IMG/VR virus record: IMGVR_UViG_3300020178_000002
Location: 62,001-126,000 of that record
Length of the DNA stretch: 64,000 nt
Reading direction: 5' to 3' (one strand)
Shown: piece by piece, positions 16,630 to 57,033 of the stretch
How the letters are laid out: the number at the start of each line of letters is the position of its first letter
Position numbering within the stretch: the stretch's first letter is position 1
Made by a program: the position numbers and the translations under genes
The notes under the pieces: model-generated
Databases searched by the model: none
What the model saw: the letters and a program-made list of their open reading frames with translations, nothing else
What the model was told of the DNA's origin: nothing

Positions 16630-18114
16630 ATGGACAGCACAATAACAGATTTAGAATATGATTCAAACTTTAACTTATGGGTTGGAACAAGCCCTGTTAA
16701 AGTAGATGGTAAAGAAAACCCAATAGGGTATTGGACATTGAAGTCATGGAGAGATATGTCTCCTAAGAAAGAGATGAAGAGTAAAGAGAATGAAGTAAGA
16801 AAGCAGTTTGCAGATAAGAAGTTTTTAGAGTTTAAGAGAGCAATAGAAGCAAAAAAGAAGTCTGAATCTGGTGAGGATATCTCGGACATAGATCTTTCTG
16901 GTTTACCTGAAGATGTTCAAGTTGGAATAAAGCAAGAGATTCCCTTAGACCAAGTTAAAAAGATTACTAGGAGAAAGAACTATGGAATCCCCTCCAAGTT
17001 TTATTTCGAGAATAACCTGCATCTGTCAAAAGAAATGTCAGAGGAAGCGATAGATAAGCTTGCTGAGGAACTCAAAAAGATGATGGTGTTTCCTACAAGA
17101 CAAAGAAGCATGGTAAGAACTAAAATATTACCTTACTTAGGAACAGGTGTTCCTTCTACATATTGGAAGTTTGTGTCAAAGATTGCAGATTCTTATTTAG
17201 CTCGCACTACAGATAAGATGGATGAGCTTTTCCTTAACAAGTTTGACGAGATGGCTTTTGGCAAAACACCAGAGGAAAGACAAGAGATTAAGAAAAGAAT
17301 TGAAACTCTAAGAAAGAGCAACCCAGAGGTCATTTCTAGGAACTTTTTTACAGTAGTTCAAACTGCAATAAGTTGGATTGCCATTCCACTTGCTTTTCTT
17401 GGAACAATTAAAAAGTTCACAGGCTTAACAGGTTTCTTATTTAGAATAGCCACTAAGATGGCCCCTGTTCTTGCTTCTTCATTGAAGGGTCTAGCAGCTC
17501 TTTATGCTGGCTGTTTTCTAGGGGTTGTGGTTCTTGGTAGTACAGTCTTTAAGTTTTTCCATACCGACCATGTTGAAAATAAAAAGAAGCAACAAAGAAA
17601 AAAGAAGGACTCAGATCCTAATGAATACCTAGCCTTTGATACACTAGCTTATCAAGTATATAGTGGTGTTGTTATTCCAGAAGACATCACAGCACATTTT
17701 CAAAAAGAGCTAGACTTTATAATGTATACAGACTCTGGAACAGAGGAACAAAGAAAAAAGAGTATTCTCGACCTATGGAAAAGATTTGACTTGAATGTTC
17801 GTTCTTCTATTGAAAAGGGTATCTATCTTAGAAAAGAAGAAGAAGGCTCTGGTTTAACTATCTTTGACGACCCTGATCTTAGGTCTAATCGTAGAGCGAG
17901 TGTAAAACCAAAAGTAGACCCTTTCTTTACAAAGTTCTATATGATAGTCAAGAATATAGAAGCAGAGGAAAAAGTCGAAGAAGCTCTTGCGAGTCCTGAA
18001 TTCAAAGACATTGCAAAAGATGTTATGAAAGGCAAGGTTAAGATTCCTCCACAGTTAGCTAAAATGACAGCTAACTTGTTGGCTTTAGAAGCTAAATCTC
18101 TTACCCAAAGTTGA
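16630..18114 (+). CDS. Hypothetical membrane protein, candidate virion-internal protein
   Basis: Central hydrophobic segments; RRAS before the C-terminal tail; AAGGAG RBS. Confidence 0.7.
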   Translation: MDSTITDLEYDSNFNLWVGTSPVKVDGKENPIGYWTLKSWRDMSPKKEMKSKENEVRKQFADKKFLEFKRAIEAKKKSESGEDISDIDLSGLPEDVQVGIKQEIPLDQVKKITRRKNYGIPSKFYFENNLHLSKEMSEEAIDKLAEELKKMMVFPTRQRSMVRTKILPYLGTGVPSTYWKFVSKIADSYLARTTDKMDELFLNKFDEMAFGKTPEERQEIKKRIETLRKSNPEVISRNFFTVVQTAISWIAIPLAFLGTIKKFTGLTGFLFRIATKMAPVLASSLKGLAALYAGCFLGVVVLGSTVFKFFHTDHVENKKKQQRKKKDSDPNEYLAFDTLAYQVYSGVVIPEDITAHFQKELDFIMYTDSGTEEQRKKSILDLWKRFDLNVRSSIEKGIYLRKEEEGSGLTIFDDPDLRSNRRASVKPKVDPFFTKFYMIVKNIEAEEKVEEALASPEFKDIAKDVMKGKVKIPPQLAKMTANLLALEAKSLTQS

Positions 18115-18427
18115 ATGGATTTGGACTAGGGATTTTGTAGTCTCCCATAGCACCATCTGACCCTGCTTCTGACCCAGCTTCTTCAACAGTAGAATCTGAC
18201 CCAGCTTCTTCAACAGTAGAATCTGACCCTGCTTCTTCAACAGTAGCATCTGACCCAGCTTCTTCAACAGTAGCATCTGATTCCTCTGGTTCAATTTCAG
18301 CATCTTCTTCTCTAACTTCCATATCTAAAGAGACTTCTTCAACTTCAGAATCAGTTTTCTTAATAGGTTTTGCAGATTCTTCTCCACAAGCAGTTAGAAC
18401 AAGAATAAATAGAATTAAGTATCTCAT
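18101..18427 (-). CDS. Acidic repeat lipoprotein
   Basis: MRYLILFILVLTA-C lipobox with AAGGAG RBS at ATG 18427; SD(A/S)TVEEAG repeats. Confidence 0.7.
   Translation of the reverse strand: MRYLILFILVLTACGEESAKPIKKTDSEVEEVSLDMEVREEDAEIEPEESDATVEEAGSDATVEEAGSDSTVEEAGSDSTVEEAGSEAGSDGAMGDYKIPSPNPFNFG
18168..18280. repeat. 27-bp coding tandem repeat, about 4 copies
   Basis: tctgaccc(a/t)gcttcttcaacagtag(a/c)a at 18168, 18195, 18222, 18249. Confidence 0.95.
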
Positions 18428-18502
18428 GGGTTGCTCCTTCCAAGGCAAAAAAATAGGTTGAGACTACAACGCTTTTTAGAGTATTTAAGACCTATGAATT
18501 TT

Positions 18503-18515
18503 TAGTCTCTTTATA
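18503..18515 (+). promoter_or_regulatory. Putative late promoter motif
   Basis: TAGTCTCTTTATA, 40 nt upstream of 18556. Confidence 0.6.
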
Positions 18516-18555
18516 GCCTCTTTAAAGAGAACAATTAACTTAAAAGGAAAAAGCT

Positions 18556-19041
18556 ATGAGAAGAATCACAGCATCCGAGAAAATCGCCCAGCTTGAAAAG
18601 AGAGTCGCTCAACTTGAAAAAGAAAGCTTTGACTTAAAGCAGATTCCAGATTGGCTCTTTGGAAGAGTGGATTCTAAAATGGAAGACCTTCATACACAAC
18701 TTAACTACAACTTCAAAAATCTTTTTGGAAACAAGGTTAAAATCACCTATCCTGTTAAACAACAGATCAAAAACCCTTTTAATGTTTCACAAGCTAAGTA
18801 TGTAGGTAAGCTCATTGTTGGTCGTGAACACATTAACTACACTGTTCTTGTTCTTAACAACTCTAAAATCCAACTCGAGGGACTCAACCCTTTCTCACCA
18901 GAGCAGTTCTATAAGTCTTCTAACTTTGTTTTCTACATCTCTAACAAGAAGGTTGTTTCTTCAAGAGACATTACCTCTGTTGCTTCTTTAGAAGCTATTG
19001 TAGATGCTATTGAAGCTAAGTACTCTCATATCTTAGCCTAA
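18556..19041 (+). CDS. Hypothetical protein with shared N-terminal leader
   Basis: MRRITASEKIAQLEKRVAQLEKES leader. Confidence 0.75.
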   Translation: MRRITASEKIAQLEKRVAQLEKESFDLKQIPDWLFGRVDSKMEDLHTQLNYNFKNLFGNKVKITYPVKQQIKNPFNVSQAKYVGKLIVGREHINYTVLVLNNSKIQLEGLNPFSPEQFYKSSNFVFYISNKKVVSSRDITSVASLEAIVDAIEAKYSHILA

Positions 19042-19491: not shown

Positions 19492-21270
19492 TTACTCCAT
19501 GCTAGAGAGCATCTCTAAGTTTGCTTTTAATCTTCTTCTGTAACTAGGGTCTCTTTTAACCCTACTAGCAATTCTTTGCAGAGCTGCTTTTTTGTTTCCT
19601 TTGAACTTCTTTTTAATAAAGTCAGCAACGATACCAACAGTCTTAATGCCTTGACTAAAGAGGTATTTAACTAGCCAACCTAGTAGTATAAAAGGTTCTG
19701 ATGCGATTGCAAAGAGAATACCTACCAAAGCAGTAATAAAAGAAGCAGAGCTTAAAAGGATAGATAAAGTAGTAGATCCTAATACAACACCCATTTTTCT
19801 TAGGTGTGAAGCTGTAAACTTAGCATTTGTTAGCAATGCAAAGATGGCTACAAAAACAATGAACCCACCAGCAGAAGTTGCAGCACCCATTAGCACTGTT
19901 TTTGCAGAAAGAGCTTTACCTGTAAAGAGGAAACTCTTAAGGTAAGGCCAGATAAGCTTAAAAGCAGCTATTTTCAGCCCAACAAAAATTGATTTAACTG
20001 CTAATATCTTAGTGTCTGGCAACAAAGATAGATACTTCATTATCTCAGAATACTTGCGAATAGAGTACATCAAAACAATTTGTGCTTTAGAAGAAGGCTC
20101 TTTGAAGTTTGGTATTTCGTGTAGGCTAAATTTACCTTTTTGTACAGACTTGTACTCATCATACTTTCTTCTAAGCTCAAACAACTCTCCTTTTAGCAAA
20201 GCCTCATCTGCTCTATTGTCAGCCAGCTCAATCTTCTCTTCTAGTTCTCTAATTTGCATAGCTACAGATTCAAACTTTGAATTATTCTCAGCTACAACTT
20301 CTCTGTACTTTTGAGAAATTGTACTTTTAATGTCTTTCATATCTTCAAAGCTAGTAGTAAGAAACCATCCTTCTTTTAGATTTATATACTCATCTAACAA
20401 AGAAAGGTACTCTTTGTAGTTTGGATCAAAGCCAAAAAATTTCTCTAGACGTTCAAATGGTATATTTGCAGCCATAGCTACTTCGCCTAGAGTTTTTGCT
20501 TTAACTAAAGTAACGACATTATCCGCCCAGATTGCAGGATTCCTTTGAGGGTCAAATTCATCTAAAACCATCTGTGCGAAAGGGTTGTGCTCTGCCATTT
20601 TCTTTACTGTCTTTGGAGTATACTCAACAAACATAGGCCAAAGAGAGCCTAAGTGTATTTTTTTATTCAAGACAGCTCCAATCAAGTACTTAACCTTAGC
20701 AACCATTCCCTTATCTATCTTCTTGCTTGCTTTTTCAGAGATGTCATTAATGACAGTAGCAGTAGCATCTAAAACTACTTTCTCTTTATCAGAAGCAAGT
20801 CTTCTATTGTCAGACATAAGGTGTGCAAGAATTAAGTTATTCATACTAGCTTTTTTACTGTGTTTCATTTTCCAAGACTTCCATTTGCTATGTGCAGGAC
20901 TAGATTTGAGTGAGGGGTCATGCCCCCAATTTCTGAGACTGATTTCCCATTTGGACATTCCAGAGCCCTTAATAGGTTGTCCTGGTTTGCCACCTAACAT
21001 ACGAGAGTTAAAACCATTCTCCTGAGCAGCATTATCAAAGTCTTGAGCTGTCCATTTGTCGAATGGCTTCGACTTTCTTCTCTTTATTCTGTGAAAAGAG
21101 TCATAGCCAGATTGTATATCACCAGCTTCTTCTGCTTCTTCTCTATTAATTGAAGCAAGAAGCCTATCATCATTCTTTGCCCATGAGTCTAAAGACTTCT
21201 GACTCATGTTTATAAGTGACTTCCACTTATTGTAGATTTCTTTTTTTTCTTCTGGTGATCTTTTGGCCAT
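19492..21270 (-). CDS. DUF3140-like N-terminal domain fused to a coiled-coil and multi-TM region
   Basis: INMS..L..W and SLRNWGHDP signature of DUF3140; C-terminal hydrophobic helices; KKAS, RLAS and RIAS motifs; AAGGAGG RBS. Confidence 0.7.
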   Translation of the reverse strand: MAKRSPEEKKEIYNKWKSLINMSQKSLDSWAKNDDRLLASINREEAEEAGDIQSGYDSFHRIKRRKSKPFDKWTAQDFDNAAQENGFNSRMLGGKPGQPIKGSGMSKWEISLRNWGHDPSLKSSPAHSKWKSWKMKHSKKASMNNLILAHLMSDNRRLASDKEKVVLDATATVINDISEKASKKIDKGMVAKVKYLIGAVLNKKIHLGSLWPMFVEYTPKTVKKMAEHNPFAQMVLDEFDPQRNPAIWADNVVTLVKAKTLGEVAMAANIPFERLEKFFGFDPNYKEYLSLLDEYINLKEGWFLTTSFEDMKDIKSTISQKYREVVAENNSKFESVAMQIRELEEKIELADNRADEALLKGELFELRRKYDEYKSVQKGKFSLHEIPNFKEPSSKAQIVLMYSIRKYSEIMKYLSLLPDTKILAVKSIFVGLKIAAFKLIWPYLKSFLFTGKALSAKTVLMGAATSAGGFIVFVAIFALLTNAKFTASHLRKMGVVLGSTTLSILLSSASFITALVGILFAIASEPFILLGWLVKYLFSQGIKTVGIVADFIKKKFKGNKKAALQRIASRVKRDPSYRRRLKANLEMLSSME

Positions 21271-28019: not shown

Positions 28020-28868
28020 ATGAATAAAATATCAACACAAGAAATTAGAAAGCTTGAAATTAGGATAGCAAGGTTAGAGAAGGAGTCCAAGATTCTTGAT
28101 TGGTTGAAGTCTATCCCTATAAACCTACTCTCTAAGATTCAAGACTCCTTTGGAGAAATTTCTTCTCTTTTAAAGCTTACCTTAAAAAAGAATAAGGAAA
28201 GTATCTTAGAGGGCTTAGTTAAGTTCTTAGAAGTTAGAGTCAGCAGTGCATTAGATAAATCTCTTATGTCTGGATACCCTATTAGGTTTTATATCACTAA
28301 TTTTGACCCAAACAATCCTATGAACTCTGAAGCCCAGCTTATGGTTAAAGAAGTAGGTGGTGAGTTAAAATCTTATGAAGCTACTATCCGAGATATGCCA
28401 TCAATGCTTAAAGATGTTGAGGGTCTACCCCCTAGCATAGATAAAGATATTAAAGGTGCATATATTTCATGGTGGAAAGACTTTGAAGAAGAACTAAAAA
28501 TGCTTCGTGAAGGAAGGATGAGTAGGTCTACGGATTTGAAATCTTTCTGGAACAGAATCAAAGGTGCAAGTAAGTTTCTTTACAGGTTCTTGAGAGTTGT
28601 CTACAGCTTTAAATGGGCTTATGAAGTGTTCTCTTTAGTTGTGATGTTTACAACCCTAATGCCTTTGGCAGAAGTTGCACCAGAAAGAGGGAAGACCCTC
28701 ACTTATCTAGGTGTTGGTAAGATGATCTTAAACATATTTGAAAAGGTTCTTCGCAGAAGAAAAGTAAATATGGATCTCTTTGATGAGCTTGCAGCTAAAA
28801 AAGCATCTTCTCACCCTTACCCATATTGTAATAGCTTAGTCTCTCATTACGAAAGGGTTTGCAAGTGA
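28020..28868 (+). CDS. Leader-bearing membrane protein (paralogue of 29547-30425)
   Basis: IRKLEIRIARLEKES leader; GAYISWWKD; RRRKVN...KKAS tail. Confidence 0.75.
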   Translation: MNKISTQEIRKLEIRIARLEKESKILDWLKSIPINLLSKIQDSFGEISSLLKLTLKKNKESILEGLVKFLEVRVSSALDKSLMSGYPIRFYITNFDPNNPMNSEAQLMVKEVGGELKSYEATIRDMPSMLKDVEGLPPSIDKDIKGAYISWWKDFEEELKMLREGRMSRSTDLKSFWNRIKGASKFLYRFLRVVYSFKWAYEVFSLVVMFTTLMPLAEVAPERGKTLTYLGVGKMILNIFEKVLRRRKVNMDLFDELAAKKASSHPYPYCNSLVSHYERVCK

Positions 28869-29546: not shown

Positions 29547-30425
29547 ATGAGACAACTAACAGCATCACAAAAAATCGCTATTCTTGAGAACAGAGTGGCT
29601 CAACTTGAAAAGCAAGCAATCATTCAAATGATTAAGAATCTGGGAATGAACTGGTTTAAACCTCTAATTGCAGCAGCTCAAGACCTTGTGTCCACTTTCA
29701 AGGGGTCAATTATAAGTAATAGAGATACTTTTGCTTCTGCTGCTGAAATGAACTTACAGGCGAGACTGACCGAAGCTCTCCAAAGAAATATGTTTTTTGG
29801 GAAAACCACATCAATAAGTGTTGAAAAATTTGATGCTAAAAACCCAGTAAACTCTGTTTTGAAAGTCTCCTATTCTGTAAATGGAGAACCCAGGTTTCTT
29901 GATTTCACTCTGAGTTCTGTACAGAAAATTAGAGAGATTGACAGTAAAACCCAAAAAGACATTATGGGAGCATATGTTTCATGGTGGAAAGATTGGGGTG
30001 ATTCTCTGGATATTGTAATCAATGGCAAATCTCCATCAAAAAGTATGGTTCAGAGCGTAATTGATTTTTTCTCTAGGAAGTTTAAGTTCCTTGGGAGATT
30101 GCTTTCTGCACTAGTTAAATTTGGAACAAAAATAAGAACCCTAACCCTGATCCCTACTTTAGTAGCATCTTTAATAGTTTGCCTTTGTGGACCTCTCGGC
30201 CTAGTTGTTGGTAGTACTGTAGCTATGAACCAAATTGGGTTAATGACACTACCAAAAGTTGTAGACATGATTCTTAAGATGATTGAGGGTGCTTTCAGAA
30301 GAAGAAAAGTAAACATTGATAAGTTCAATGAAATAATTGGCAAACAAGCATCTGTGAATAAGTATGCAAGTAAATACCCACACACATATTCTATGTTATT
30401 AAGACTTGAGGGTGCTGGAGTCTAA
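29547..30425 (+). CDS. Leader-bearing membrane protein (paralogue of 28020-28868)
   Basis: MRQLTASQKIAILENRVAQLEKQA; GAYVSWWKD; RRRKVN...KQAS. Confidence 0.75.
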   Translation: MRQLTASQKIAILENRVAQLEKQAIIQMIKNLGMNWFKPLIAAAQDLVSTFKGSIISNRDTFASAAEMNLQARLTEALQRNMFFGKTTSISVEKFDAKNPVNSVLKVSYSVNGEPRFLDFTLSSVQKIREIDSKTQKDIMGAYVSWWKDWGDSLDIVINGKSPSKSMVQSVIDFFSRKFKFLGRLLSALVKFGTKIRTLTLIPTLVASLIVCLCGPLGLVVGSTVAMNQIGLMTLPKVVDMILKMIEGAFRRRKVNIDKFNEIIGKQASVNKYASKYPHTYSMLLRLEGAGV

Positions 30426-30426: not shown

Positions 30427-31053
30427 ATGAACCAGAGAGACATAAAGAATATCAGAGAAGATCTTGATCGAATTGAAAGTAAATACCAAGTCTTAGGGAG
30501 TGCTATGAACAACCCTAAGTACAGTTGGAACTTCTATTCAATTGAAGATCTTAAAGACATCCTTAAAGAGGTTGATTCTTTCCATAAAGCAGATCTTCAA
30601 AAAGCACAGTCTTGGGCTAATATAGAGCTTAATAGAATATCTACTCCAGGTAGCTTTGGGATTGATCAACTTAACTTTGGATGGCATGACCTTATTTACA
30701 AAACAAATAAGGTTTTGATGATCAAAGAATATCTCCCTGAACTTATTAAAAAAAGAGAGCGAGATAGAGATGAAGTTCTTGAGGACATCAAAGATGTAAG
30801 AGAGCTTGTTGCTAAATCATACGAAAGCGACAGTGATCCTTTGGTTAGATTAAGTCTTGAAAGACTCACTAAGAAGATAACAAGACTCAAACCAGTATTT
30901 AAAGATGTCACTGAAGAAATGAGCGAGTTAAAAAGAGACTTAGAGAGGGCTCAAGAGTTCCTACCTAAAGTTAAAAATAAGCTTAGAAAGTGGTTTAGGT
31001 TAGCAGACCAACAAGCTAGTATAAGAGTGGCTAGTAGACACCTCAAAAAATAA
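30427..31053 (+). CDS. Coiled-coil protein with C-terminal QASIRVASRHLKK tag
   Basis: GGAG RBS before ATG 30427. Confidence 0.65.
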   Translation: MNQRDIKNIREDLDRIESKYQVLGSAMNNPKYSWNFYSIEDLKDILKEVDSFHKADLQKAQSWANIELNRISTPGSFGIDQLNFGWHDLIYKTNKVLMIKEYLPELIKKRERDRDEVLEDIKDVRELVAKSYESDSDPLVRLSLERLTKKITRLKPVFKDVTEEMSELKRDLERAQEFLPKVKNKLRKWFRLADQQASIRVASRHLKK

Positions 31054-34813: not shown

Positions 34814-35122
34814 ATGACAGATAGTTTTAAAGATGAGATAGAACTTCATGCGGAAGAAAATGGGCTTTCATACCATGATGCAATCTTGGATTTGGTAGCT
34901 AAAGAAAACATGATGAGTAAAGACAGAGTAATTGCTGTGGGTTTCAGCACTCATAAAGCAATGTCTCACCTGATATACAATACATGGTCTGACTTTAGGT
35001 CTTTTTCTTTAGCTTTTAATAATCTCATTCTGGCTAAATATGTTAAGCCTGCAAGATATAATAGGACTATTAGTCAAAGTTCAATGAGAAGTCTTTACAT
35101 GAACGCTAAAAGAGCAAATTAA
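34814..35122 (+). CDS. Hypothetical protein
   Basis: ORF coupled to the upstream gene. Confidence 0.6.
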   Translation: MTDSFKDEIELHAEENGLSYHDAILDLVAKENMMSKDRVIAVGFSTHKAMSHLIYNTWSDFRSFSLAFNNLILAKYVKPARYNRTISQSSMRSLYMNAKRAN

Positions 35123-46464: not shown

Positions 46465-46928
46465 TACTGATATAAAGCCATGATCTTTTGACGCTGGCGA
46501 GGTGTTCTAACGCTATTTTTGACGATAGTTTTAATGTTCTGGATGATGAATTTAGGGTTTTCAGAAGAGAAGTTAGGCACTACCACTAAATTAAATTGTT
46601 CTCTGGTGTATATACTTGTTAAGTAAACCCTTAGTAGGTCTTGCTCCTTATCAAGCTCTACATTAATAAACATAAGTTGTTGTCTATCATTTTTGATATG
46701 ACCTCGTGCCTCTAATTGGTATATTTTATTGGGCTTTTTGATGTAGCCATCATCACCTTTGGTGTTTGCAAGACCATAGTCTACCAGAGCATCTCCTGTT
46801 CCGTTAGCTATTGCCTTAAGGGTTTCTTTAATTTTATCTCCAAAAATGTCAAATAGTCCAGCTTCTTTTTCAAGCCTGGCGATTCTCATTTCAAGAGATC
46901 TGATTTGTTGTGCTGCTGTTCTTCTCAT
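46461..46928 (-). CDS. Hypothetical protein with shared N-terminal leader
   Basis: MRRTAAQQIRSLEMRIARLEKEA from ATG 46928 (AGGA RBS). Confidence 0.75.
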   Translation of the reverse strand: MRRTAAQQIRSLEMRIARLEKEAGLFDIFGDKIKETLKAIANGTGDALVDYGLANTKGDDGYIKKPNKIYQLEARGHIKNDRQQLMFINVELDKEQDLLRVYLTSIYTREQFNLVVVPNFSSENPKFIIQNIKTIVKNSVRTPRQRQKIMALYQY

Positions 46929-46969
46929 TTTACGTTTTCCTATCTGATAAAGATTCATTCCTTGTGGGA

Positions 46970-46982: not shown

Positions 46983-48812
46983 TTAATATAAAGGTGTCTT
47001 TGCGACAGAGATTTCACGACTAGATGCTTTAACTTCTTCTTCTACAATGTCGATGATATCATCAACAACCAACTCTGAAGAGAGATCTCTTACTGCGTTG
47101 ACTACATTTTGTGGGATGCTAAAGAGTTTTTCTAACAGACCTGTACAAGTCACTATGTTTGATGTTGTCAACTCTTCTTCAAAGGTATGTGGCATAACAG
47201 ATAAGATCAAGCTCATACGAACACCCTCTGCCATAGGGATTGCAACAAGAGAGTAAGGGTAGCTCTTGTCACTATCTTTAAAGTAAGACTTTACCCTATC
47301 TTTGTAGATCCTATTAACAACAGAGAGTTGAATATCTCCCCTTTGCATTTCTTTTTCTCTGATGTTCAAATATATGTCAATATACTTCATCATTGTAGAT
47401 TTGAAGTTAGCAGGTGTAACTCCCATAGTAGTTATAGGCAAGCAGAGTTTGCAAGACTCCCACAAGGCTGCAATGTAATCCTCTGGCTCTGTGCTGTTCT
47501 CTGCAATATTTGCCATTGAAGTACCCCATTTTTTAGAGCTACTGTGCAGATCACCCTCAATCTTGATTCCCTGATAGGTGAATCCACCATTAACAGCCAA
47601 GAACAAGTTGACCCACTGAGGAATAGATTTGGTTCTCTTCCTCATTCTTTTTGCAAAGTCAGACTTTCCTTTTTTAACCTTTGTTTTAATCTTAGGGTTA
47701 AAGATTTTAGCATCTGCATCCATACAATTATCAACAAAAGAAGCAAAGAGCCTAAGTTGTCCAATGCTCATAAACTTGTATTTCTTAATGATCATTGGTG
47801 CAAGCTTCCTCGAAGACACCTCACTACAAGTCATTACTATATCTTGAACTATATCTTCATCCCATCTCTTAGCGATAAGCATAGCCCAATCTTCATCAAG
47901 CATTCTCCATACACTCGCAGACAAGAATAAGAGATCTTTCTTCTTTTGTAGCATATTTGCAGACATATTATATGTTGCGTTCTCTTTAAATGCCTTACCC
48001 TCTAAAGCTCTGGTGATAAGATTATCTACTTCTTTTTGAGCAACTAAAGGGTCTGTGCCATCAAAGAGTTCCATTTGGTCATAGACAGTTGTATTTGATG
48101 AGGTGTCCTCTATATTTTCAATTGGGTCACCATAAGCATTTTCGTCTGTGTTTAAGTCTACAATATATCTTTTCCTCTTTAAGTCACCTGGCATGATCTC
48201 TCGTTTGGTGAAGTGAGGACTTTTTGGGTCATATACTCTTCTAATATAATTGCCAACATACTTAATTGCAGATGCAATGTCTGTAAACTTACTAGGGTCT
48301 TTGTTGAGTCTGTACCAGACACCACCATTAAGCTCCATTTGAGTCTTACCAGCACTAGAGCGAGAAGCTTCAGGTTCGCTCTTATTTCTGCCATGAGGTA
48401 TTAAGAAATATCTAGAGAAAAGGTCTGTACCTAAGTCCATAAAAGAACCTCTAAATGTAGATGCTAATTTACTAAGCATAGTAGCCCATTCAGCACCACC
48501 AGAACCATTCCACTCATCCATAATCATCTTATCAAGAGAGCTGTCTCTTCTTCTTAATTGTCTTCTTAGCCCTCGAAAGTCCGAAGGTAAAGTAGAGTCT
48601 GTAGGTTCTAATTCTGTTTGACCAAGAGCGAATAAAGTGGACCATGCAGTGTAATAAAAGTACCTTTGAGAAGTCTCTTTATTAAAAGGGTCGCTAAGGT
48701 CTTTCAAAAAAGCTTCTTTAAGCCACATCTCTGAGGCTGCTTTGATGAGATTCTCTGAAGCTTGCTTATCTCTCTGGCTTATAATGTCAACTAACTTTAA
48801 ATATGGACTCAT
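46983..48812 (-). CDS. Large hypothetical protein with KQAS/KAAS/KEA-containing N-terminus
   Basis: 609 aa ORF, GGGAGG RBS, late motif upstream. Confidence 0.7.
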   Translation of the reverse strand: MSPYLKLVDIISQRDKQASENLIKAASEMWLKEAFLKDLSDPFNKETSQRYFYYTAWSTLFALGQTELEPTDSTLPSDFRGLRRQLRRRDSSLDKMIMDEWNGSGGAEWATMLSKLASTFRGSFMDLGTDLFSRYFLIPHGRNKSEPEASRSSAGKTQMELNGGVWYRLNKDPSKFTDIASAIKYVGNYIRRVYDPKSPHFTKREIMPGDLKRKRYIVDLNTDENAYGDPIENIEDTSSNTTVYDQMELFDGTDPLVAQKEVDNLITRALEGKAFKENATYNMSANMLQKKKDLLFLSASVWRMLDEDWAMLIAKRWDEDIVQDIVMTCSEVSSRKLAPMIIKKYKFMSIGQLRLFASFVDNCMDADAKIFNPKIKTKVKKGKSDFAKRMRKRTKSIPQWVNLFLAVNGGFTYQGIKIEGDLHSSSKKWGTSMANIAENSTEPEDYIAALWESCKLCLPITTMGVTPANFKSTMMKYIDIYLNIREKEMQRGDIQLSVVNRIYKDRVKSYFKDSDKSYPYSLVAIPMAEGVRMSLILSVMPHTFEEELTTSNIVTCTGLLEKLFSIPQNVVNAVRDLSSELVVDDIIDIVEEEVKASSREISVAKTPLY

Positions 48813-49888: not shown

Positions 49889-49930
49889 AAGCCCTGCTTC
49901 CCAGAAATGGAAGGCAGGGCTTTTTTTTTT
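49889..49930 (+). terminator. Intrinsic terminator
   Basis: AAGCCCTGCTTCC-loop-GGAAGGCAGGGC followed by T10. Confidence 0.9.
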
Positions 49931-51554
49931 ACAAGAATTTTTTGAGGTTCTTAATCTCTGACTTTAAATTTTGTAGAGCACTTGAAGCAATATGCATCTT
50001 TTCAGAGGCAGCTTTACCTGCCTTTTGTTTCTGGTTTACAGACTTAACATACTTCTGAACCTGTGCCTTGATTTCAGCAACAGCTTTTTCCATTTCAGCC
50101 CTGTAGCCATCTGCATCAAAGTTCCCATCTTCATCAATAAACTGAGAAACAGCTAGTAGCTCATCTTTACCTATGTTCCCATAAAATTGAGCAAGGGCAT
50201 CTTCAAAGTTGACTTTAGCAGCAACTCTCATTGCATTGTCTACTGCATTACCTACTAAGAATGCACTACCACCAACAACTTTGCCTATACCTGAAATGCC
50301 TGCGTTGAAAGTGCCCCAAAGCAGACCCTCTGACACTTCTTTAGCTCCAATGGCAAGCTCTTTTGTAGCTTCAGCTATAGCTGACATAGCACTTTGCCTA
50401 CCTTTTGTGATTTCTTCACTAATCTTAGTCTGGCTTTCTTTATTGACACTATTTCCAAAAACTGCGGAGATTGCTTTCTTAACAGAGTTTGAGATTTTCT
50501 TGGTGTCAACTTGAGCAGCTTGACTAAAACCCTCAGAGAACGAATCTCGAGGGTCTCTAGTGCCATCTAGCATAGCTTTACCAATAGCTTTCGGTGCTTT
50601 ACCAAAGGCTGCTTGGATAGGAGTAGCGAGAGCTGGCCCCCATGTAGGTAAATGTTCAGAGCTTTTAACAACTTGATCAGTCCACCTTGTTTTGTTGTGT
50701 TTTTTCATAAACGCAACAGCTTTACTATTCAGAGGATGGTCTTTCTTTGATGCATAAGACCTAACAGTAGAAAGAGCTAAGTCTTTACCTTCAAATTGAA
50801 CTCTTTCAACTTTTTTTGGCTTAGATTCAGGCTTGCTTTTCGGTTTCTTTTTGTCTTTGCCAAAAATTGCAACTCTTTCATTATGTGCTTTTTTAATTCC
50901 GAAGAAGCCACCTATGTCTCTTTTAAAACGATTCCATTTATTACCAGCTATATTTGCAAGGCTGTCATTCTCTTCAACGACTTTACATAGCCTATCAAAT
51001 TCTGGCTCAAGCTCTCTAAATATGGGAAGCTCTAGTCTTCCTAAATTGTTTTTTTCTCGATATATGCCTTGTTTTATCTTATCAAGAGCATCAAAAGAAG
51101 AAGCTGTCTCTGCTTCTTCAGTCCAGCCTTTGATTAAATCCCTTACTCTCTTTAGCTTTTTAGTACGCTCTTTGACAATATCATCTATGGTAGTCTTAAT
51201 CTTATACAAGTCCTTTGCTTTATTTTGAACTCGACTATAATAGTGGTGGTGTAAAGAATTGTTTATAGCCTTAAGATCTATCTTCTTCATGGTATAAAAT
51301 ATGTTCTTCATATCTTTAGTTGATAGGTCTTCTGGACTATAAGTGCTAGAAAACATACCTTTACCATAAGACAAAACTTTGTAGTTAAGTTCTGACCATA
51401 TCTTCTCAACTTTATGACCATCCTCTATTAGCTTCTTGAGACTAGGCCACTTCTTATCAAAGTCAGCCCTATGTCTCTCTAAAGCTTCACCACTAGGCTG
51501 GTAAGGTAGTCTTTTCAAGTATTCATCAAATTCTATCTCTTTGTTAATATTCAT
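49929..51554 (-). CDS. Multi-module helical protein, candidate virion-internal protein
   Basis: Coiled coil, KKA/RVA junctions, Ala/Gly-rich hydrophobic segment, KAAS..HIAS tail. Confidence 0.65.
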   Translation of the reverse strand: MNINKEIEFDEYLKRLPYQPSGEALERHRADFDKKWPSLKKLIEDGHKVEKIWSELNYKVLSYGKGMFSSTYSPEDLSTKDMKNIFYTMKKIDLKAINNSLHHHYYSRVQNKAKDLYKIKTTIDDIVKERTKKLKRVRDLIKGWTEEAETASSFDALDKIKQGIYREKNNLGRLELPIFRELEPEFDRLCKVVEENDSLANIAGNKWNRFKRDIGGFFGIKKAHNERVAIFGKDKKKPKSKPESKPKKVERVQFEGKDLALSTVRSYASKKDHPLNSKAVAFMKKHNKTRWTDQVVKSSEHLPTWGPALATPIQAAFGKAPKAIGKAMLDGTRDPRDSFSEGFSQAAQVDTKKISNSVKKAISAVFGNSVNKESQTKISEEITKGRQSAMSAIAEATKELAIGAKEVSEGLLWGTFNAGISGIGKVVGGSAFLVGNAVDNAMRVAAKVNFEDALAQFYGNIGKDELLAVSQFIDEDGNFDADGYRAEMEKAVAEIKAQVQKYVKSVNQKQKAGKAASEKMHIASSALQNLKSEIKNLKKFL

Positions 51555-51557: not shown

Positions 51558-52064
51558 TTAGCCTCTAATTCTACGCTCATGTAGAAATATAACATCTCCA
51601 CTGCTGGGGTTTTTTCTAGCTAGAGACTTCCAGACTCTAATAGCTTTATCTGAAGTAGTTCTAGTATGACAATAGTTAGGAATAAAGAAGATAGGGATTC
51701 CAACATCCTCTCTTACTTTATTTGCAATGGTTTTATACATCAATATGCCACATTTTTTATTTCGATGCTCTTCATCTAGGTTAGATTCTGTTATCTCAAA
51801 AACAGGAATACCATTTTCCCATGTGCTTGCAGGGAAAGAATCGCTCCACAGTTCCCATAAGATTTCCATGTCCTCTTTGCATACAAAGTTATCGAAATCA
51901 GATACCTCTATATAGTGGAGAGCACCCTCGATAGAGCCTACTATTTCATCATTATGGATCAAATCAAAACCATGTGTTGCGTCATATCTTGTCCAATCTG
52001 TTTCTTCAATAGTGTACCTGTTTTTCTTAGCGTACCTGAGAGCTACTTTCTTTGCTAATCTCAT
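51558..52064 (-). CDS. GNAT-like acetyltransferase (paralogue of 53767-54270)
   Basis: LDEEHRNKKCGILMY acetyl-CoA-loop-like; TSDKAIRVWKSL. Confidence 0.6.
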   Translation of the reverse strand: MRLAKKVALRYAKKNRYTIEETDWTRYDATHGFDLIHNDEIVGSIEGALHYIEVSDFDNFVCKEDMEILWELWSDSFPASTWENGIPVFEITESNLDEEHRNKKCGILMYKTIANKVREDVGIPIFFIPNYCHTRTTSDKAIRVWKSLARKNPSSGDVIFLHERRIRG

Positions 52065-52477: not shown

Positions 52478-52480
52478 TGA

Positions 52481-53766: not shown

Positions 53767-54270
53767 TTAAGGTCTTTTTAAGATAGCAATACAGTCACCA
53801 GAGGAAGGGTGGTTTTTAGCGAGGGAACTCCACACTCTTTTAGCATCTACACTAGTGCTCCCACCCTCATCATTACATTCCTGTGGAATGAAGATAAAAG
53901 GATTACTACCATTTCTATCCCATTGGAGTTTTGCATACATGAGATACATCTTAGTGCCATACCCTTGACCCTTAAGCTCTTGCTCTATCCTACTTCTATC
54001 GACTTCAACAATACGAATTCCTTTAGAGCTTTTCATTTGAGGGTACTTGTTTACAAGAACCATTATGTCGTCATAGCAAGCAAACCTTGTGATGTCAGGG
54101 TATATGTTATGATACCCTTCAACAATCCCTAAACGATTGCCATCACCAGACATGAGACTAACAGAAGCCAACTCTCCAAATGGAGGGTCTTTTTGATACT
54201 GCTTCATAAATGTTAGTTTTTGTTTAGCCATGTGCTTCATTGCAATTCTCTTTATAAGTTGTTTTTTCAT
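53767..54270 (-). CDS. GNAT-like acetyltransferase
   Basis: IEQELKGQGYGTKMY motif A; start ATG 54270 after AGGGGG. Confidence 0.7.
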   Translation of the reverse strand: MKKQLIKRIAMKHMAKQKLTFMKQYQKDPPFGELASVSLMSGDGNRLGIVEGYHNIYPDITRFACYDDIMVLVNKYPQMKSSKGIRIVEVDRSRIEQELKGQGYGTKMYLMYAKLQWDRNGSNPFIFIPQECNDEGGSTSVDAKRVWSSLAKNHPSSGDCIAILKRP

Positions 54271-54297
54271 ACAGCCCCCTATATGAAAAGGGTCTTC

Positions 54298-54605: not shown

Positions 54606-54654
54606 TGTGAACCTCCTAATTTATGGTTTATATTTGATTATACCGATTGTGTAC

Positions 54655-55008
54655 TCAATCTTTATAGAAAAAGATCTCATGTCCCTCTAAAAATTTGAAC
54701 GTTTCTTTTTTAGTCTTGGAACTGTATTCTTTTACCAACAAAGGATTAATTTGTGACACCCAAAGTAGCAAGTCAGGTTTATGAGGTAGCTTAGTCCAAC
54801 CGATATAGATTAAACCATCTTCATCAAGCCAAACTCTCTCATGCCCTAAAGCTTTTCGATTAGTAAAAAGTATAACCAAGCCATTCTTCTCTACCCAAGC
54901 TTTAGACTTCTCTAAAGTTTCGGGGTCTTTATCATAGAACCCTCGTATATAAGAAGAGGGTAGTATGCAAGAAGGCTTGACTCTACGCTTATACTTTATT
55001 GGCTTCAT
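54655..55008 (-). CDS. Hypothetical protein
   Basis: TAATG-coupled to 55008-55976. Confidence 0.55.
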   Translation of the reverse strand: MKPIKYKRRVKPSCILPSSYIRGFYDKDPETLEKSKAWVEKNGLVILFTNRKALGHERVWLDEDGLIYIGWTKLPHKPDLLLWVSQINPLLVKEYSSKTKKETFKFLEGHEIFFYKD

Positions 55009-55976
55009 TAATCTTTTTGAAAGGTTCTAGGGTTTACCTTAGAAAGTTCCTTCAAATCACCCATAGCATCCTCTACAAATACATTCTTATCTGGGATAAA
55101 GTCATCAAGGTCTTGGTTATCAACAAACATGTCTGTTGTTCCAGAGAGTACTTTCTTAAACCTAGCCCAAGCTTTCCCTCTCTTAAGGAATGCTTCTTTT
55201 GGATTGTAGTAGAAAAGTCCAATGACCCCAAGTGTCAAACCATATTTAAAGAGGAAGGTAGCTAAAGATGGGAAAACCATTCCTATCATGAAAGTCTTTA
55301 CAGCAGCAGATATAAAAGGACCTAAGCCTTTTGACTCACTGCCCCAATATTTTTTTGCAATAAGAGCATCTTTAACAGGGTTAATAGTATTCAAAGCTGC
55401 ATTAGCTACTTCAGAAATAGTTCTTGTACCGATATCTCTTCTTGCAACAGAAATAGCTCTAGCTTTTAACTCTGAAGAAGGCTGACCCTCATATCCCATT
55501 AAGTATTCTTCATAGAAAGGAGCTGTCTGGTAGAAAGAGCCAGAAACTTGAGTTGTGAGCTTTGCAAACTTTTTATTCTTAACTTTCCATGCAAGATAAG
55601 AAAGCAACTGTTCCTCATCTCTTTTAGGTTTTTCATTCTTCCTATCTAAAGCACCTCTTCTCCAAGAGTCATACATACCCTCAAGGAGTCTTTCAAAAGC
55701 AATCGCTCTAAAGAACTTAGTTAGGTGTGAAATGATAGGTGTGTATATGAATATAAACTTTGTAATCTTATGGAGAATGTTAGCAAAGAAAGTCCTAACA
55801 CCGACAATCTTAGCCACACCTGAGTCTATAAGATTTGTTATAAAGTTTTTAGCTTCCTTTATAGTAGTTGCTTCTTTGAACTGATAGTTAGCAATCCTAT
55901 AAAGGGTTCTTTTATCTTCCGAAGCAAACCTTAGATTTGCCTTGAAAACACTAGGGTCATCTAGAAAATTAATCAT
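55008..55976 (-). CDS. Membrane protein, tandem paralogue A
   Basis: MINFL..RFAS..RIANYQFKEA; PFYEEYLMGYEG; RDIGTRT. Confidence 0.75.
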   Translation of the reverse strand: MINFLDDPSVFKANLRFASEDKRTLYRIANYQFKEATTIKEAKNFITNLIDSGVAKIVGVRTFFANILHKITKFIFIYTPIISHLTKFFRAIAFERLLEGMYDSWRRGALDRKNEKPKRDEEQLLSYLAWKVKNKKFAKLTTQVSGSFYQTAPFYEEYLMGYEGQPSSELKARAISVARRDIGTRTISEVANAALNTINPVKDALIAKKYWGSESKGLGPFISAAVKTFMIGMVFPSLATFLFKYGLTLGVIGLFYYNPKEAFLKRGKAWARFKKVLSGTTDMFVDNQDLDDFIPDKNVFVEDAMGDLKELSKVNPRTFQKD

Positions 55977-57033
55977 TATCTAGTTCCTTTCTTATATCCT
56001 CTAGCTCTTCCTCAGATGGATTTACAAGCTGACCTAAAGAGTTCGAAACAAACACATCTTTCCTCAAGACTTTTTTGCCTAGAACTTCTTCAAAGTTGGA
56101 CTCAAAGTATTTCTTATCTTTGAAAAGTTTAGAGAAATGTCTAACCACATAGCCTTTTTGGAAGAAAGCTTCTGAGCCACTGTAATAGAAAAACCCTAAA
56201 ATACCAAGAGGGATCATTCCTTTTAAAAGAAGCATTCCATAGCCCATCTCAACCACAACAATCCAGAGTATTGATTGAGGGAGAATTCTCCTTATAACAT
56301 CGTTTGTATAATTACTTTTAGTTATTTTAACTTGTTGTCCTGTTCCTCTTTGCAGCTTTTTGCCTGTATATGCCTCATTGTCTACCATATCTCGCATAAG
56401 CTGGAACATAGTATTAAAGATATTCAAAGAGTCAAAGGCAGCTTTAGCTACCTCAGAAACAGTTCTTGTACCAATATCTCTGTCTGTAACCATCTTAGCT
56501 CTAGCAGCAAGACTGTTCTCATCTTTACCCTCATAGCCCATTAAGTATTCTTCATAGAAAGGATCTGCCATATAGAAAGTGCCTTGAGATTTAACATAGG
56601 CACTTCGGAAGTGCCTGCCATTGAACATCTTGCTCTTTTTTATTCGATTGCTTAGATAAACACTCACAGCCTTTGCTGTTCTTTTTTTGTTGTTTATTTT
56701 GTCTTTAACACCCAACAGCCATGAATCATACATTGCACTTAAAAGTCTCTTATAAGCTACCTTTCTAAAGAAATTAGTAAGGTGCGAGATGACAGGTGTA
56801 GATAAAAAGAACTTTTTGGTCACAGCATGGATTGCATTGACTGTCTTCTGATAAAGGTTTTTAACCCAGATCACACCTGAAGATATAGCATTAGTTAGCC
56901 AGTTAGAGACCTTAGGCATTGAGTTTGCTTGTCTTAACTGATAGTTTGCAATCTTATATAAAGAAGACCTGTCAACAGAAGCAAGCTTGACTTGAGCAGA
57001 GAATTGCTCTGGAGAAGCAAGGAAATTAATCAT
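55969..57033 (-). CDS. Membrane protein, tandem paralogue B
   Basis: MINFL..KLAS..KIANYQLRQA; PFYEEYLMGYEG; RDIGTRT. Confidence 0.75.
   Translation of the reverse strand: MINFLASPEQFSAQVKLASVDRSSLYKIANYQLRQANSMPKVSNWLTNAISSGVIWVKNLYQKTVNAIHAVTKKFFLSTPVISHLTNFFRKVAYKRLLSAMYDSWLLGVKDKINNKKRTAKAVSVYLSNRIKKSKMFNGRHFRSAYVKSQGTFYMADPFYEEYLMGYEGKDENSLAARAKMVTDRDIGTRTVSEVAKAAFDSLNIFNTMFQLMRDMVDNEAYTGKKLQRGTGQQVKITKSNYTNDVIRRILPQSILWIVVVEMGYGMLLLKGMIPLGILGFFYYSGSEAFFQKGYVVRHFSKLFKDKKYFESNFEEVLGKKVLRKDVFVSNSLGQLVNPSEEELEDIRKELDND

What the first reader, a model, noticed from the sequence alone, without database searches (positions are those of the whole stretch)
16630..57033. The same basic-x-A(S) tags also appear as shorter leaders, internal linkers and C-terminal trailers
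Seen in motif-preceded units. N-terminal: KKVALRY (52064), KRIAMKH (54270), KQAS..KAAS..KEA (48812), RFAS..RIANYQFKEA and KLAS..KIANYQLRQA (55976, 57033). Internal: KKAS..RLAS right after the DUF3140 domain (21270), TKKA (10743), KKA..RVA (51554). C-terminal: QASIRVASRHLKK (31053), KKAALQRIASR (19492), KKAS (28868), KQAS..KYAS (30425), RRAS (18114), KAAS..HIAS (49929). They tend to fall at domain boundaries. Inference: a [RK]-[VI]-A-x-[RK] docking element plus K-x-A cut sites can be placed at either end, and some proteins may be polyproteins.
Basis: partly seen in the sequence, partly recalled or inferred. Interest (0 to 1): 0.65.

Follow-up and report, generated by a model that had tools for sequence, protein, structure and literature searches.

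The report
Cut-and-address tags on phage head cargo
In this uncultured 312-kb phage, and in its relatives including phage G, a short motif (Lys/Arg-x-Ala-Ser) and two kinds of terminal helix mark the ends and domain joints of dozens of proteins; they are most likely the cutting sites of the head-maturation protease plus address tags that load cargo proteins into the capsid.

Summary
[KR]-x-A-S occurs 130 times in the phage's 327 ORFs against 57 expected (z 9.8). It is five-fold concentrated in the last 45 residues, and permuted controls are flat. Bare K-x-A is barely enriched (1.15x), so items such as TKKA or KEA carry no weight.

The window belongs to a 312-kb phage related to Bacillus phage G, Tunturiibacter phage Tunturi_5 and LR745208. 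In all of these the motif clusters in three places: the prohead protease (assemblin/T4 gp21 fold), the acidic scaffold beside it, and putative ejection proteins. It is scarce in tail proteins. In 120 protease homologues it sits at fixed positions, as conserved islands in variable linkers.

A second tag, [KR][VI]A-x-[RK][YFH], is terminal and conserved across genomes. So is a portable coiled-coil leader, found on 27 proteins here. In window gene 19492-21270 the KKAS/RLAS pair lies exactly where a DUF3140-like module ends. In relatives that module is fused to unrelated enzymes through the same junction.

Best reading: protease sites ([KR]-x-A|S, reminiscent of herpesvirus A|S) plus capsid-targeting tags. 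This is a new variant of the T4/phiKZ propeptide theme. Cleavage itself is inferred, not shown.

The parts
20866..21270 (-). DUF3140-like N-terminal module (aa 1-135) of the 592-aa protein encoded at 19492-21270
   Evidence: Pfam PF11338 E 0.053, spanning the full profile. The module is 60-84% identical in 100 metagenomic proteins with unrelated bodies. AF2 pLDDT is 84-96 up to residue ~139.
20845..20856 (-). KKAS (aa 139-142), junction site directly after the module
   Evidence: pLDDT collapses at residue 140. A strict [KR].AS lies within ~30 aa after the module in 63 of 100 homologues.
20791..20802 (-). RLAS (aa 157-160), second junction site
   Evidence: It lies in the low-confidence stretch 140-219.
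19558..19575 (-). RIASRV (aa 566-571), C-terminal site and tag 27 aa from the end, preceded by KKAALQ
17890..17901 (+). RRAS (aa 421 of 494) in the protein encoded at 16630-18114
   Evidence: A paralogue at genome 12477-13862 has an N-terminal RVLRKY and a C-terminal KKAS.
18556..18627 (+). N-terminal coiled-coil leader ending LEKES, gene 18556-19041
   Evidence: Leader regex found in 27 proteins, always within the first ~30 aa. 22 of 27 leaders end in LE-[KR]-x-[AS].
28020..28088 (+). N-terminal leader ending LEKES, gene 28020-28868
28797..28808 (+). KKAS, 23 aa before the C-terminus of the protein encoded at 28020-28868
   Evidence: Paralogues carry the same [KR]xAS followed by a YP tail.
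29547..29618 (+). N-terminal leader ending LEKQA, gene 29547-30425
   Evidence: Retained unchanged in orthologues of 48-90% identity, and shared as the only similarity by six unrelated small hydrophobic proteins.
30342..30371 (+). KQAS..KYAS, C-terminal trailer sites 27 and 21 aa from the end
   Evidence: The C-terminal ~45 aa, including K[QKS]AS, are among the best-conserved parts of the orthologues.
31009..31041 (+). QQAS-I-RVASRH composite tag at the extreme C-terminus of the protein encoded at 30427-31053
   Evidence: The same composite, K.[AS]S-(I)Q-RVA.RYL, recurs after the DUF3140-like module in relatives.
46860..46958 (-). N-terminal leader (aa 1-33) ending LEKEA, gene 46461-46958
48732..48767 (-). 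KQAS (aa 16) and KAAS (aa 24), short N-terminal leader of the 609-aa protein encoded at 46983-48812
48459..48470 (-). KLAS (aa 115) in the same protein
49983..50015 (-). KAAS..HIAS, C-terminal trailer (28 and 21 aa from the end) of the 541-aa protein encoded at 49929-51554
   Evidence: The paralogue at genome 219229-220242 ends in KTAS-RVASRYL.
52032..52049 (-). KVALRY, N-terminal tag (aa 6-11) of the 168-aa protein encoded at 51558-52064
   Evidence: The motif class is enriched (15 against 3.9) and terminal.
54232..54249 (-). RIAMKH, N-terminal tag (aa 8-13) of the paralogous 167-aa protein encoded at 53767-54270
55869..55931 (-). RFAS (aa 16) followed by RIANYQFKEA (aa 27-36), N-terminus of the protein encoded at 55008-55976
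   Evidence: Conserved in the neighbouring paralogue.
56926..56988 (-). KLAS (aa 16) followed by KIANYQLRQA (aa 27-36), N-terminus of the protein encoded at 55969-57033
35119..35763 (-). ClpP-related protease gene (context: the rival candidate enzyme)
   Evidence: NCBIfam NF045542 'head maturation protease, ClpP-related', 104 bits against a cut-off of 120. The family is absent from LR745208.1 and Tunturi_5, which nevertheless have the motif clusters.

Best explanation
The window is part of a complete 312-kb tailed phage of the phage G / Tunturi_5 / LR745208 clade. [KR]-x-A-S is most likely the recognition site of its prohead (capsid-maturation) protease. That enzyme has the herpesvirus-assemblin / T4 gp21 fold and is encoded outside the window (genome 176745-178133), next to an acidic scaffold protein and the HK97-fold major capsid protein. 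By analogy with assemblin the cut would fall between Ala and Ser.

The proteins that carry the motif near a terminus or at a domain joint would be head-internal cargo. Many of them have hydrophobic, membrane-type helices, as ejection proteins do. The cargo would be brought into the prohead by portable address elements: a two-heptad coiled-coil leader (I..LE.R[IV]A.LE-[KR]-x-[AS]), a basic amphipathic tag ([KR][VI]A-x-[RK][YFH]L) at either extreme end, family-specific C-terminal tails, and a DUF3140-like carrier module. The protease would then trim these elements off or separate them, so that some gene products behave as small polyproteins.

Shown here: the motif statistics, its positional bias, its clade-wide conservation in protease, scaffold and putative ejection proteins, the portability of the tags, and the fold of the protease. 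Inferred: that cleavage happens, the scissile bond, that the tags dock, and their partner.
For: 1. Specific enrichment and terminal bias of [KR].AS, with flat permuted controls.
2. The proteins with the most sites include the protease itself (5), the adjacent acidic scaffold (6) and a 783-aa protein encoded beside the terminase large-subunit gene (9).
3. Clade-wide conservation despite GC contents from 33 to 58%. The LR745208 orthologues keep 3, 6 and 6 sites, two of the scaffold sites at homologous positions, one of them ~22 aa before the conserved C-terminal tail. In 100 kb of Tunturi_5, K.AS is seen 28 times against 8.5 expected; sites lie in the protease C-terminus, the acidic gp332 (4), the 'DNA ejection protein' gp328 (5), gp348 (7) and the DarB-like gp350 (5). 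In the first 50 kb of phage G: 16 against 4.5, in the C-terminus of protease gp19, in portal gp14 and in gp7. Three metagenomic relatives have 4-6 sites in the protease and 8-9 in the scaffold.
4. In 120 protease homologues the mean is 3.0 sites against 0.37 expected. The positions are fixed: residue ~25 (R 121/121, A 121/121, S 106/121) and residue ~281 (K113-x-A105-S74), the latter an island in a gappy linker just after the catalytic domain. The AF2 model puts both in disordered segments that flank the core.
5. The protease core (52-266) best matches herpesvirus proteases (Z 8.3, 8.2) and T4 gp21 (Z 8.1), and hits PHROG 18299 'head maturation protease'.
6. Tail and fibre proteins are poor in the motif (3 sites in 15,732 aa). 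Untagged genes in the window span are at background.
7. The tags are portable. The leader is on 27 proteins in 15 families, with synonymous codon variation. It is also on unrelated proteins in other phages and at C-termini. RVAxRY is enriched and terminal in two genomes.
8. The DUF3140-like module is joined to unrelated enzymes via KKAS +/- RVAxRYL on either side, and AF2 puts the domain boundary at residue 139-140.
9. Precedent: T4, phiKZ and SPN3US propeptides with a protease motif repeated in the protease, the scaffold-like proteins and the ejection proteins (PMC10052503).
Against: - There is no mass-spectrometric or biochemical evidence of cleavage in any member of the clade. None was found in the searched literature.
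- Some carriers are not obvious head proteins: a UvrD-like helicase (6 sites) and a volactin, and a type IB topoisomerase.
- Genome-wide enrichment in LR745208 is weak (1.29x) and its leader family is absent.
- Three protease sites (381, 410, 420) lie in a confidently folded helical domain.
- Cutting at some extreme C-terminal tags would remove only 5-9 residues.
- The portal of this phage has no strict site.
- The fold match is only moderate (Z ~8, model pLDDT 60).
Confidence: 0.6

Rival explanations
1. The motifs are real processing sites, but they are cut by another enzyme (the ClpP-related protease in the window at 35119-35763, or a host protease), and processing is not tied to the capsid.
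For: A ClpP-related gene whose best match is 'head maturation protease, ClpP-related' lies in the window. Phage G encodes ClpP/ClpX, and both were detected in its virions. Some motif carriers look like replication or cytoskeletal proteins.
Against: The CLP_protease family is absent from the whole records of LR745208.1 and Tunturi_5, which still have the motif clusters in protease, scaffold and ejection proteins. The hosts of the clade differ widely, so a shared host protease is unlikely. The sites sit at conserved positions flanking the catalytic domain of the assemblin-fold protease itself.
Confidence: 0.12
2. The motifs are uncleaved short linear binding motifs (for docking to scaffold, capsid, portal or a chaperone), or structural helix-capping signatures. 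Nothing is cut.
For: Several tags are so close to the end that cutting would remove only a few residues. The RVAxRY tag has variable P1' residues (A, Q, L, M, F). Some sites lie inside confident helices.
Against: The motif clusters in exactly the proteins that other phages process: the protease C-terminus, the scaffold, N-terminal propeptides and ejection proteins. It marks joints between modules that occur as separate or differently fused genes in relatives. The Ala-Ser pair is invariant in otherwise variable linkers.
Confidence: 0.13
3. [KR]-x-A-S is a phosphorylation site for a basophilic Ser kinase (cf. Kemptide RRAS).
For: A basic residue at -3 from Ser resembles AGC-type kinase sites (own knowledge). 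RRAS and KRAS variants occur.
Against: The genome has no Pkinase-family gene. The strict Ala at -1 and the terminal or linker placement are not kinase features. The motif is conserved across phages of unrelated hosts.
Confidence: 0.04
4. Compositional or paralogy artefact: the strings reflect Lys/Ala/Ser richness and recent gene duplication.
For: Twelve leader proteins form one BLAST cluster. Bare K-x-A is at 1.15x.
Against: Shuffles preserve each protein's composition. Permuted motifs are flat. The enrichment survives with one representative per family (z 6.9). It recurs in genomes of GC content 33-58%.
Confidence: 0.02

Closest known systems
T4 prohead protease gp21 with capsid-targeting sequences of internal proteins (cut at L/I-x-E)
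   Same: The protease has the same fold class (T4 gp21, 5jbl, Z 8.1). Short N-terminal address peptides are followed by a protease motif. The motif is repeated in the protease, the scaffold and the internal proteins.
   Different: The motif is [KR]-x-A-S, with no Glu at P1. The tags are also C-terminal and internal. The leader is a two-heptad coiled coil carried by 27 proteins. Targeting has not been tested.
Giant-phage proteases phiKZ gp175 / SPN3US gp245 (A-x-E motif; N-terminal propeptides, C-terminal self-cleavage)
   Same: Many head and ejection proteins carry multiple motif copies in propeptides. The protease removes its own C-terminal part. Long precursors are cut into several pieces (PMC10052503).
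   Different: This is a different phage clade (phage G-like, with a small HK97-type capsid protein of 292 aa). The specificity is different. C-terminal trailers are widespread, whereas in SPN3US all substrate propeptides but the protease's own are N-terminal.
Herpesvirus assemblin and scaffold (UL26/UL26.5): R-site and M-site, consensus (V/L/I)-x-A|S
   Same: The Ala-Ser pair is shared. One site lies just after the protease domain (about residue 281) and one ~22 aa before the conserved C-terminal tail of the scaffold, like the R and M sites. The best structural matches of the protease core are herpesvirus proteases (Z 8.2-8.3).
   Different: P3 is Lys/Arg, not hydrophobic. Protease and scaffold are separate genes. 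The scissile bond is assumed, not shown. The herpesvirus consensus is cited from established knowledge, not from a tool.
Encapsulin cargo-loading peptides
   Same: Short terminal peptides, at either end, that address diverse cargo to the inside of an HK97-fold shell.
   Different: There is no sequence resemblance to the known loading peptides, those are not cleaved, and binding to the capsid protein is untested.
Phage P1 Dar proteins and MuF-fused head cargo (conserved carrier joined to variable effector)
   Same: A conserved module (here DUF3140-like) is fused to variable enzymatic bodies in phage genomes. The Tunturi_5 DarB-like protein carries 5 motif copies.
   Different: The carrier domain is different. 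The junction bears a putative protease site. Packaging has not been demonstrated.

Membership tests
Assemblin / T4 gp21-fold prohead protease (the enzyme proposed to read the motif; genome 176745-178133, outside the window) | Fold of the catalytic domain | tested here: met
   In the AF2 model (pLDDT 60), core residues 52-266 align with the proteases of PRV (Z 8.3) and VZV (Z 8.2) and with T4 gp21 (Z 8.1, 131 aligned residues). Herpesvirus proteases and gp21 dominate the Foldseek list, though each with a weak E-value.
Assemblin / T4 gp21-fold prohead protease | Gene placed with the scaffold and major capsid protein genes | tested here: met
   The order is protease, acidic scaffold, a 202-aa protein, then the HK97-fold capsid protein (NF042927, 155 bits). 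The order is the same in L031, L033 and Tunturi_5, and the corresponding genes are consecutive in LR745208.
Assemblin / T4 gp21-fold prohead protease | Conserved catalytic His and Ser | tested here: inconclusive
   His130 (FVEH) and Ser181 (SMGC) are invariant in 32 homologues and present in Tunturi_5 gp331 and phage G gp19. Their assignment as the catalytic pair is an inference from spacing, not a superposition.
Prohead-protease substrate motif systems (T4 LxE, phiKZ/SPN3US AxE) | Motif recurs in the protease itself, the scaffold and head-internal proteins, not in tails | tested here: met
   Tail block: 3 sites in 15,732 aa.
Prohead-protease substrate motif systems (T4 LxE, phiKZ/SPN3US AxE) | Glu at P1 | tested here: not met
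   The enriched motif has Ala-Ser. [DE].AS and other variants are not enriched. The system therefore works like these but has a different specificity.
Prohead-protease substrate motif systems | Cleavage demonstrated at the motif | not testable with these tools
   This needs proteomics or an in vitro assay. No such data were found for phage G or Tunturi_5.
Herpesvirus assemblin sites (V/L/I)-x-A|S | Ala-Ser at the site, hydrophobic P3 | tested here: not met
   Ala-Ser is present, but P3 is K/R (enrichment 1.7-2.0x, no hydrophobic preference). Hydrophobic or Thr residues are preferred at P2.
T4-type capsid-targeting sequence | Short N-terminal peptide followed by the protease motif | tested here: met
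   27 leaders lie within the first ~30 aa, and 22 of them end in LE-[KR]-x-[AS].
T4-type capsid-targeting sequence | Sufficient to direct a protein into the prohead | not testable with these tools
   This requires fusion-protein packaging experiments.
Pfam DUF3140 (PF11338), for aa 1-135 of the protein encoded at window 19492-21270 | Score above the gathering threshold | tested here: not met
   14.4 bits against 25, E 0.053, but covering profile positions 2-91 of 92. Four related proteins carry PF11338 in the precomputed annotation. Best called DUF3140-like.
Ser/Thr kinase substrate motif | A kinase available to the phage | tested here: not met
   No PF00069 match in the complete genome.

The most novel reading that the evidence does not exclude
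A whole clade of huge phages (phage G, Tunturi_5, LR745208 and hundreds of metagenomic relatives) uses an assemblin-fold protease with a herpesvirus-like Ala|Ser specificity, together with a generalised, portable 'address plus cut' system: a coiled-coil leader, the RVAxRYL tag and a DUF3140-like carrier. The system would load scores of different proteins into the capsid, including membrane-active proteins and enzymes such as Ntn-hydrolase/ChaC, JmjC-type and GNAT domains. The injected effector repertoire of any such phage could then be read directly from its genome.
Probability: 0.35. Interest if true: 0.8.

Novelty: new variant of a known kind. Interest (0 to 1): 0.62.

Why it matters
If the reading is right, three things follow.
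1. It gives a sequence rule that predicts, from genome data alone, which proteins of an uncultured 312-kb phage and its many relatives are packed into the head and trimmed there. That list of candidate injected effectors would include membrane-active proteins and host-modifying enzymes.
2. The rule is directly testable in two cultivable relatives, phage G and Tunturi_5.
3. The Ala-Ser specificity in an assemblin-fold phage protease, with sites placed like the herpesvirus R and M sites, adds a concrete point to the phage-herpesvirus assembly relationship.

The portable leader and tags could also serve as handles for loading foreign proteins into large phage capsids.

Tried and rejected
- Megablast of the window against phage records: no match.
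- Literature search for the tag strings themselves: no paper. The phage G and Tunturi papers report no cleavage motif and, for Tunturi_5, no virion proteomics.
- Complex prediction of the major capsid protein with the C-terminal 44 residues of the protein encoded at 30427-31053: the verdict was 'no answer', so it counts neither for nor against binding. An earlier attempt failed because the machine was busy.
- Fold search of the whole model of the protein encoded at 19492-21270: no meaningful match.
- PDB sequence search with the protease: only a spurious designed-repeat hit.
- The search for related loci with the single protease sequence: only two fragments of near-identical phages.
- A crude promoter split (TTTATA upstream against the rest) gave only a modest difference: 1.62 against 1.09 sites per 1000 aa, and terminal sites in 21% against 10% of genes. 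The promoter call is too rough to carry weight.
- Signal-peptidase-type A-x-A processing was rejected on sequence grounds: K/R at -3 and no hydrophobic core.
- One script call returned nothing and was repeated.

Full report
WHAT THE WINDOW IS. The 64-kb window is bases 62001-126000 of a single 312,136-bp contig with terminal overlap. GC is 38% and I called about 327 ORFs; the source classes the record as a complete virus with direct terminal repeats. PHROG, Pfam and NCBIfam identify a large terminase, a portal, a head-maturation protease and an HK97-fold major capsid protein. All of these lie outside the window. The nearest deposited phages, by protein, are:
- the uncultured 485-kb phage LR745208.1 (portal 71%, capsid protein 89%, protease 42% identity; GC 55%);
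- Tunturiibacter phage Tunturi_5;
- Bacillus phage G.

CHECK OF THE OBSERVATION. In the whole proteome:
- [KR].AS occurs 130 times against 57 expected from within-protein shuffles (z 9.8).
- The permuted controls SA.[KR], [KR].SA, [KR].AT and [KR].GS, and also [DE].AS, are flat.
- K.AS and R.AS rank 9th-10th of about 8000 gapped tripeptides. The preferences are specific: K/R at the first position, Ala at the third, Ser at the fourth.
- With one representative per paralogue family the excess remains (97 against 47.8, z 6.9).
- The motif is concentrated at the ends: 38 against 7.7 in the last 45 residues, and 18 against 7.5 in the first 40.
The proteins he listed carry 3.7 per 1000 aa. The other genes of the span, which include a type IB topoisomerase and a ClpP-like protease, carry 0.57 per 1000, which is the background rate. 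The listed set was chosen for having the motif.
- Tail and fibre proteins have 3 sites in 15,732 aa.
- Bare [KR].A is only 1.15x enriched. TKKA, KKA and KEA-type items are therefore not evidence.

THREE ELEMENTS, NOT ONE.
(a) The cut-site candidate, [KR]-x-A-S.
(b) A basic tag, [KR][VI][ASCV]-x-[RK][YFH] (RVAS-RYL type). It occurs 15 times against 3.9 expected here and 14 against 4.0 in LR745208. Nine of the 15 lie within 25 residues of a terminus.
(c) A coiled-coil leader, I..LE.R[IV]A.LE, found on 27 proteins and always within the first ~30 residues. In 22 of the 27 it ends in [KR]-x-[AS]. The conserved residues use varied synonymous codons, so selection acts on the peptide.
The leader occurs in 15 BLAST families. 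In the 14-member pentapeptide-repeat family one member has the leader, while others have C-terminal KRAS/RKAS..RVAARF tags.

WHERE THE MOTIF CONCENTRATES. The richest carriers are a 783-aa protein encoded beside the terminase large-subunit gene (9 sites), the acidic Met/Asp/Glu-rich protein next to the protease (6), the protease itself (5) and a UvrD-like helicase (6). The same pattern holds in relatives of very different base composition:
- LR745208: the orthologues keep 3, 6 and 6 sites although they are barely alignable. Two scaffold sites are at homologous positions, one of them about 22 residues before the conserved C-terminal tail.
- Tunturi_5: K.AS occurs 28 times against 8.5 expected in 100 kb. 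Sites lie in the protease C-terminus, the acidic gp332, the 'DNA ejection protein' gp328, gp348 and the DarB-like gp350.
- Phage G: 16 against 4.5 in the first 50 kb. Sites lie in the C-terminus of protease gp19, both ends of portal gp14, and gp7.
- Three metagenomic relatives (GC 33-47%): 4-6 sites in the protease and 8-9 in the scaffold. One has KLAS at residue 27 of the capsid protein.
LR745208 lacks the leader family and shows only 1.29x enrichment genome-wide. The core use therefore looks ancestral, and the wide spread onto many proteins looks lineage-specific.

THE PROTEASE.
- Among 120 homologues (47-95% identity) the mean is 3.0 sites per protein against 0.37 expected.
- The sites are at fixed places: residue ~25 (R and A invariant, S in 106 of 121) and residue ~281 (K113-x-A105-S74). 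The latter stands as a conserved island in a gappy linker directly after the catalytic domain.
- The AF2 model (pLDDT 60) shows residues 1-31 and 269-312 as disordered flanks of a core at 35-265, followed by a long helix and a confident C-terminal helical domain.
- The core aligns best with herpesvirus proteases (Z 8.3, 8.2) and T4 gp21 (Z 8.1).
- His130 and Ser181 are invariant and are candidate catalytic residues; this is an inference.
- The rival enzyme, the ClpP-related gene in the window, belongs to a family absent from the complete records of LR745208 and Tunturi_5, which nevertheless show the motif clusters.
- No Pkinase gene exists in the genome.

DOMAIN BOUNDARIES AND POLYPROTEINS (window gene 19492-21270).
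- Its first ~135 residues are a DUF3140-like module (sub-threshold Pfam hit spanning the whole profile).
- The module recurs at 60-84% identity in 100 metagenomic proteins from contigs of the same phage clade.
- It is N-terminal in 87 of them and C-terminal in 13, joined to unrelated bodies: JmjC/cupin, AAT-type Ntn-hydrolase with ChaC, SWIM, GNAT and others.
- A strict [KR].AS follows the module within about 30 residues in 63 of 100, and a relaxed form in 76. It is often continued by (I)Q-RVA.RYL or by a leader-type helix.
- Where the module is C-terminal, KFAS or KTAS-..-VAQRYL precedes it.
- AF2 gives pLDDT 84-96 up to residue ~139 and below 50 from residue 140. KKAS (139) and RLAS (157) therefore sit exactly at the boundary.
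- The AAT/ChaC enzyme that relatives fuse behind this junction is a separate, untagged gene here (window 25009-26430). That is the fusion/fission pattern expected at a processing site.

LEADERS AND TRAILERS (window gene 29547-30425). Orthologues of 48-90% identity keep the leader and the C-terminal ~45 residues (K[QKS]AS..KYPHTY..LRLE) better than the body. Six unrelated small hydrophobic proteins share nothing with it but the leader. A relative also has leader-like helices at C-termini, and C-terminal [KR][IV]A[SH][KR]Y[LM] tags occur in three relatives. Many tagged window proteins contain membrane-type hydrophobic helices, as ejection proteins do.

INTERPRETATION. The anatomy matches the known logic of head maturation in T4, phiKZ and SPN3US. 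In those phages one protease motif is repeated in the protease, the scaffold-like proteins and the ejection proteins; propeptides address proteins to the prohead; and the protease removes its own C-terminal part (PMC10052503). What differs here:
- the motif is [KR]-x-A-S, sharing Ala-Ser with the herpesvirus (V/L/I)-x-A|S consensus (established knowledge);
- trailers and internal joints are used as freely as leaders;
- the address elements are interchangeable;
- there is a conserved carrier module.
Cleavage, the scissile bond, docking and the docking partner are all inferred. One complex prediction (capsid protein with a tag) gave no answer and is not evidence either way.

VERDICT. The system is a new variant of a known kind. 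Confidence in the protease-site-plus-address reading is 0.6.

Noticed in passing
window 35119-35763 (-): ClpP-related protease gene whose best match is NCBIfam 'head maturation protease, ClpP-related' (104 bits, below the cut-off of 120). This is a second protease in a phage that already has an assemblin-fold prohead protease. Phage G also has ClpP/ClpX; LR745208 and Tunturi_5 have none.
   Followed up: partly
window 22514-23851 (+): Type IB topoisomerase (PF01028, E 4.5e-15) with a basic N-terminal extension and one REAS. A paralogue at genome 184900-186267 ends with an RVAS trailer.
   Followed up: partly
window 25009-26430 (-): Fusion of an AAT-type Ntn-hydrolase domain and a ChaC/gamma-glutamyl cyclotransferase domain, starting MDKNA-C. 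In related phages the same enzyme is fused behind the DUF3140-like module and a KKAS junction.
   Followed up: partly
window 13088-13888 and 13888-14691 (+): Two tandem, nearly identical genes (266 and 267 aa) with an SPPY motif typical of N6/N4 DNA methyltransferases. They belong to a six-member family in the genome.
   Followed up: no
upstream of many tagged genes, e.g. window 18510, 29502, 46990; genome-wide: A (G/A)TTTATA(G) motif 35-60 nt upstream of start codons is the most enriched upstream 7-mer class (probably a late promoter). A second enriched motif is TTGATAA(TA). Genes in TTTATA units have somewhat more sites (1.62 against 1.09 per 1000 aa).
   Followed up: partly
genome 176745-178133 (window-equivalent 114745-116133, outside the window): The prohead protease carries a conserved CxxC-x(10)-CxH insert (Cys191, Cys194, Cys205, His207) between the candidate catalytic Ser and the end of the core. 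It is also present in Tunturi_5 gp331 and phage G gp19 and looks like a zinc ribbon.
   Followed up: no
genome 178152-179819 (outside the window): The scaffold-like protein is extremely acidic and Met-rich, with repeats such as DPMAEE and MMADLMDD. Its C-terminal ~20 residues (..LSKLWESAPDVSKFFG) are conserved across relatives with GC 33-55%.
   Followed up: partly
genome 157152-158144 (outside the window): A volactin-family actin homologue (PF25216, E 5e-74), 63% identical to one in LR745208.
   Followed up: no
genome 252721-255843 (outside the window): The large terminase is 1040 aa against 639 aa in LR745208. Only residues 524-1020 align, and the N-terminal part hits a PHROG of unknown function. 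This may be an inserted element or an intein.
   Followed up: no
window 45130-46464 (+) and 13 other genes genome-wide: A 14-member pentapeptide-repeat protein family. Different members carry the leader, C-terminal KRAS/RKAS..RVAARF tags, or no tag.
   Followed up: partly
window 16630-18114, 19492-21270, 29547-30425, 55008-57033: Several tagged proteins contain one to three long hydrophobic, membrane-type helices. This fits membrane-inserting ejection proteins, but it was read by eye and not tested with a predictor.
   Followed up: no
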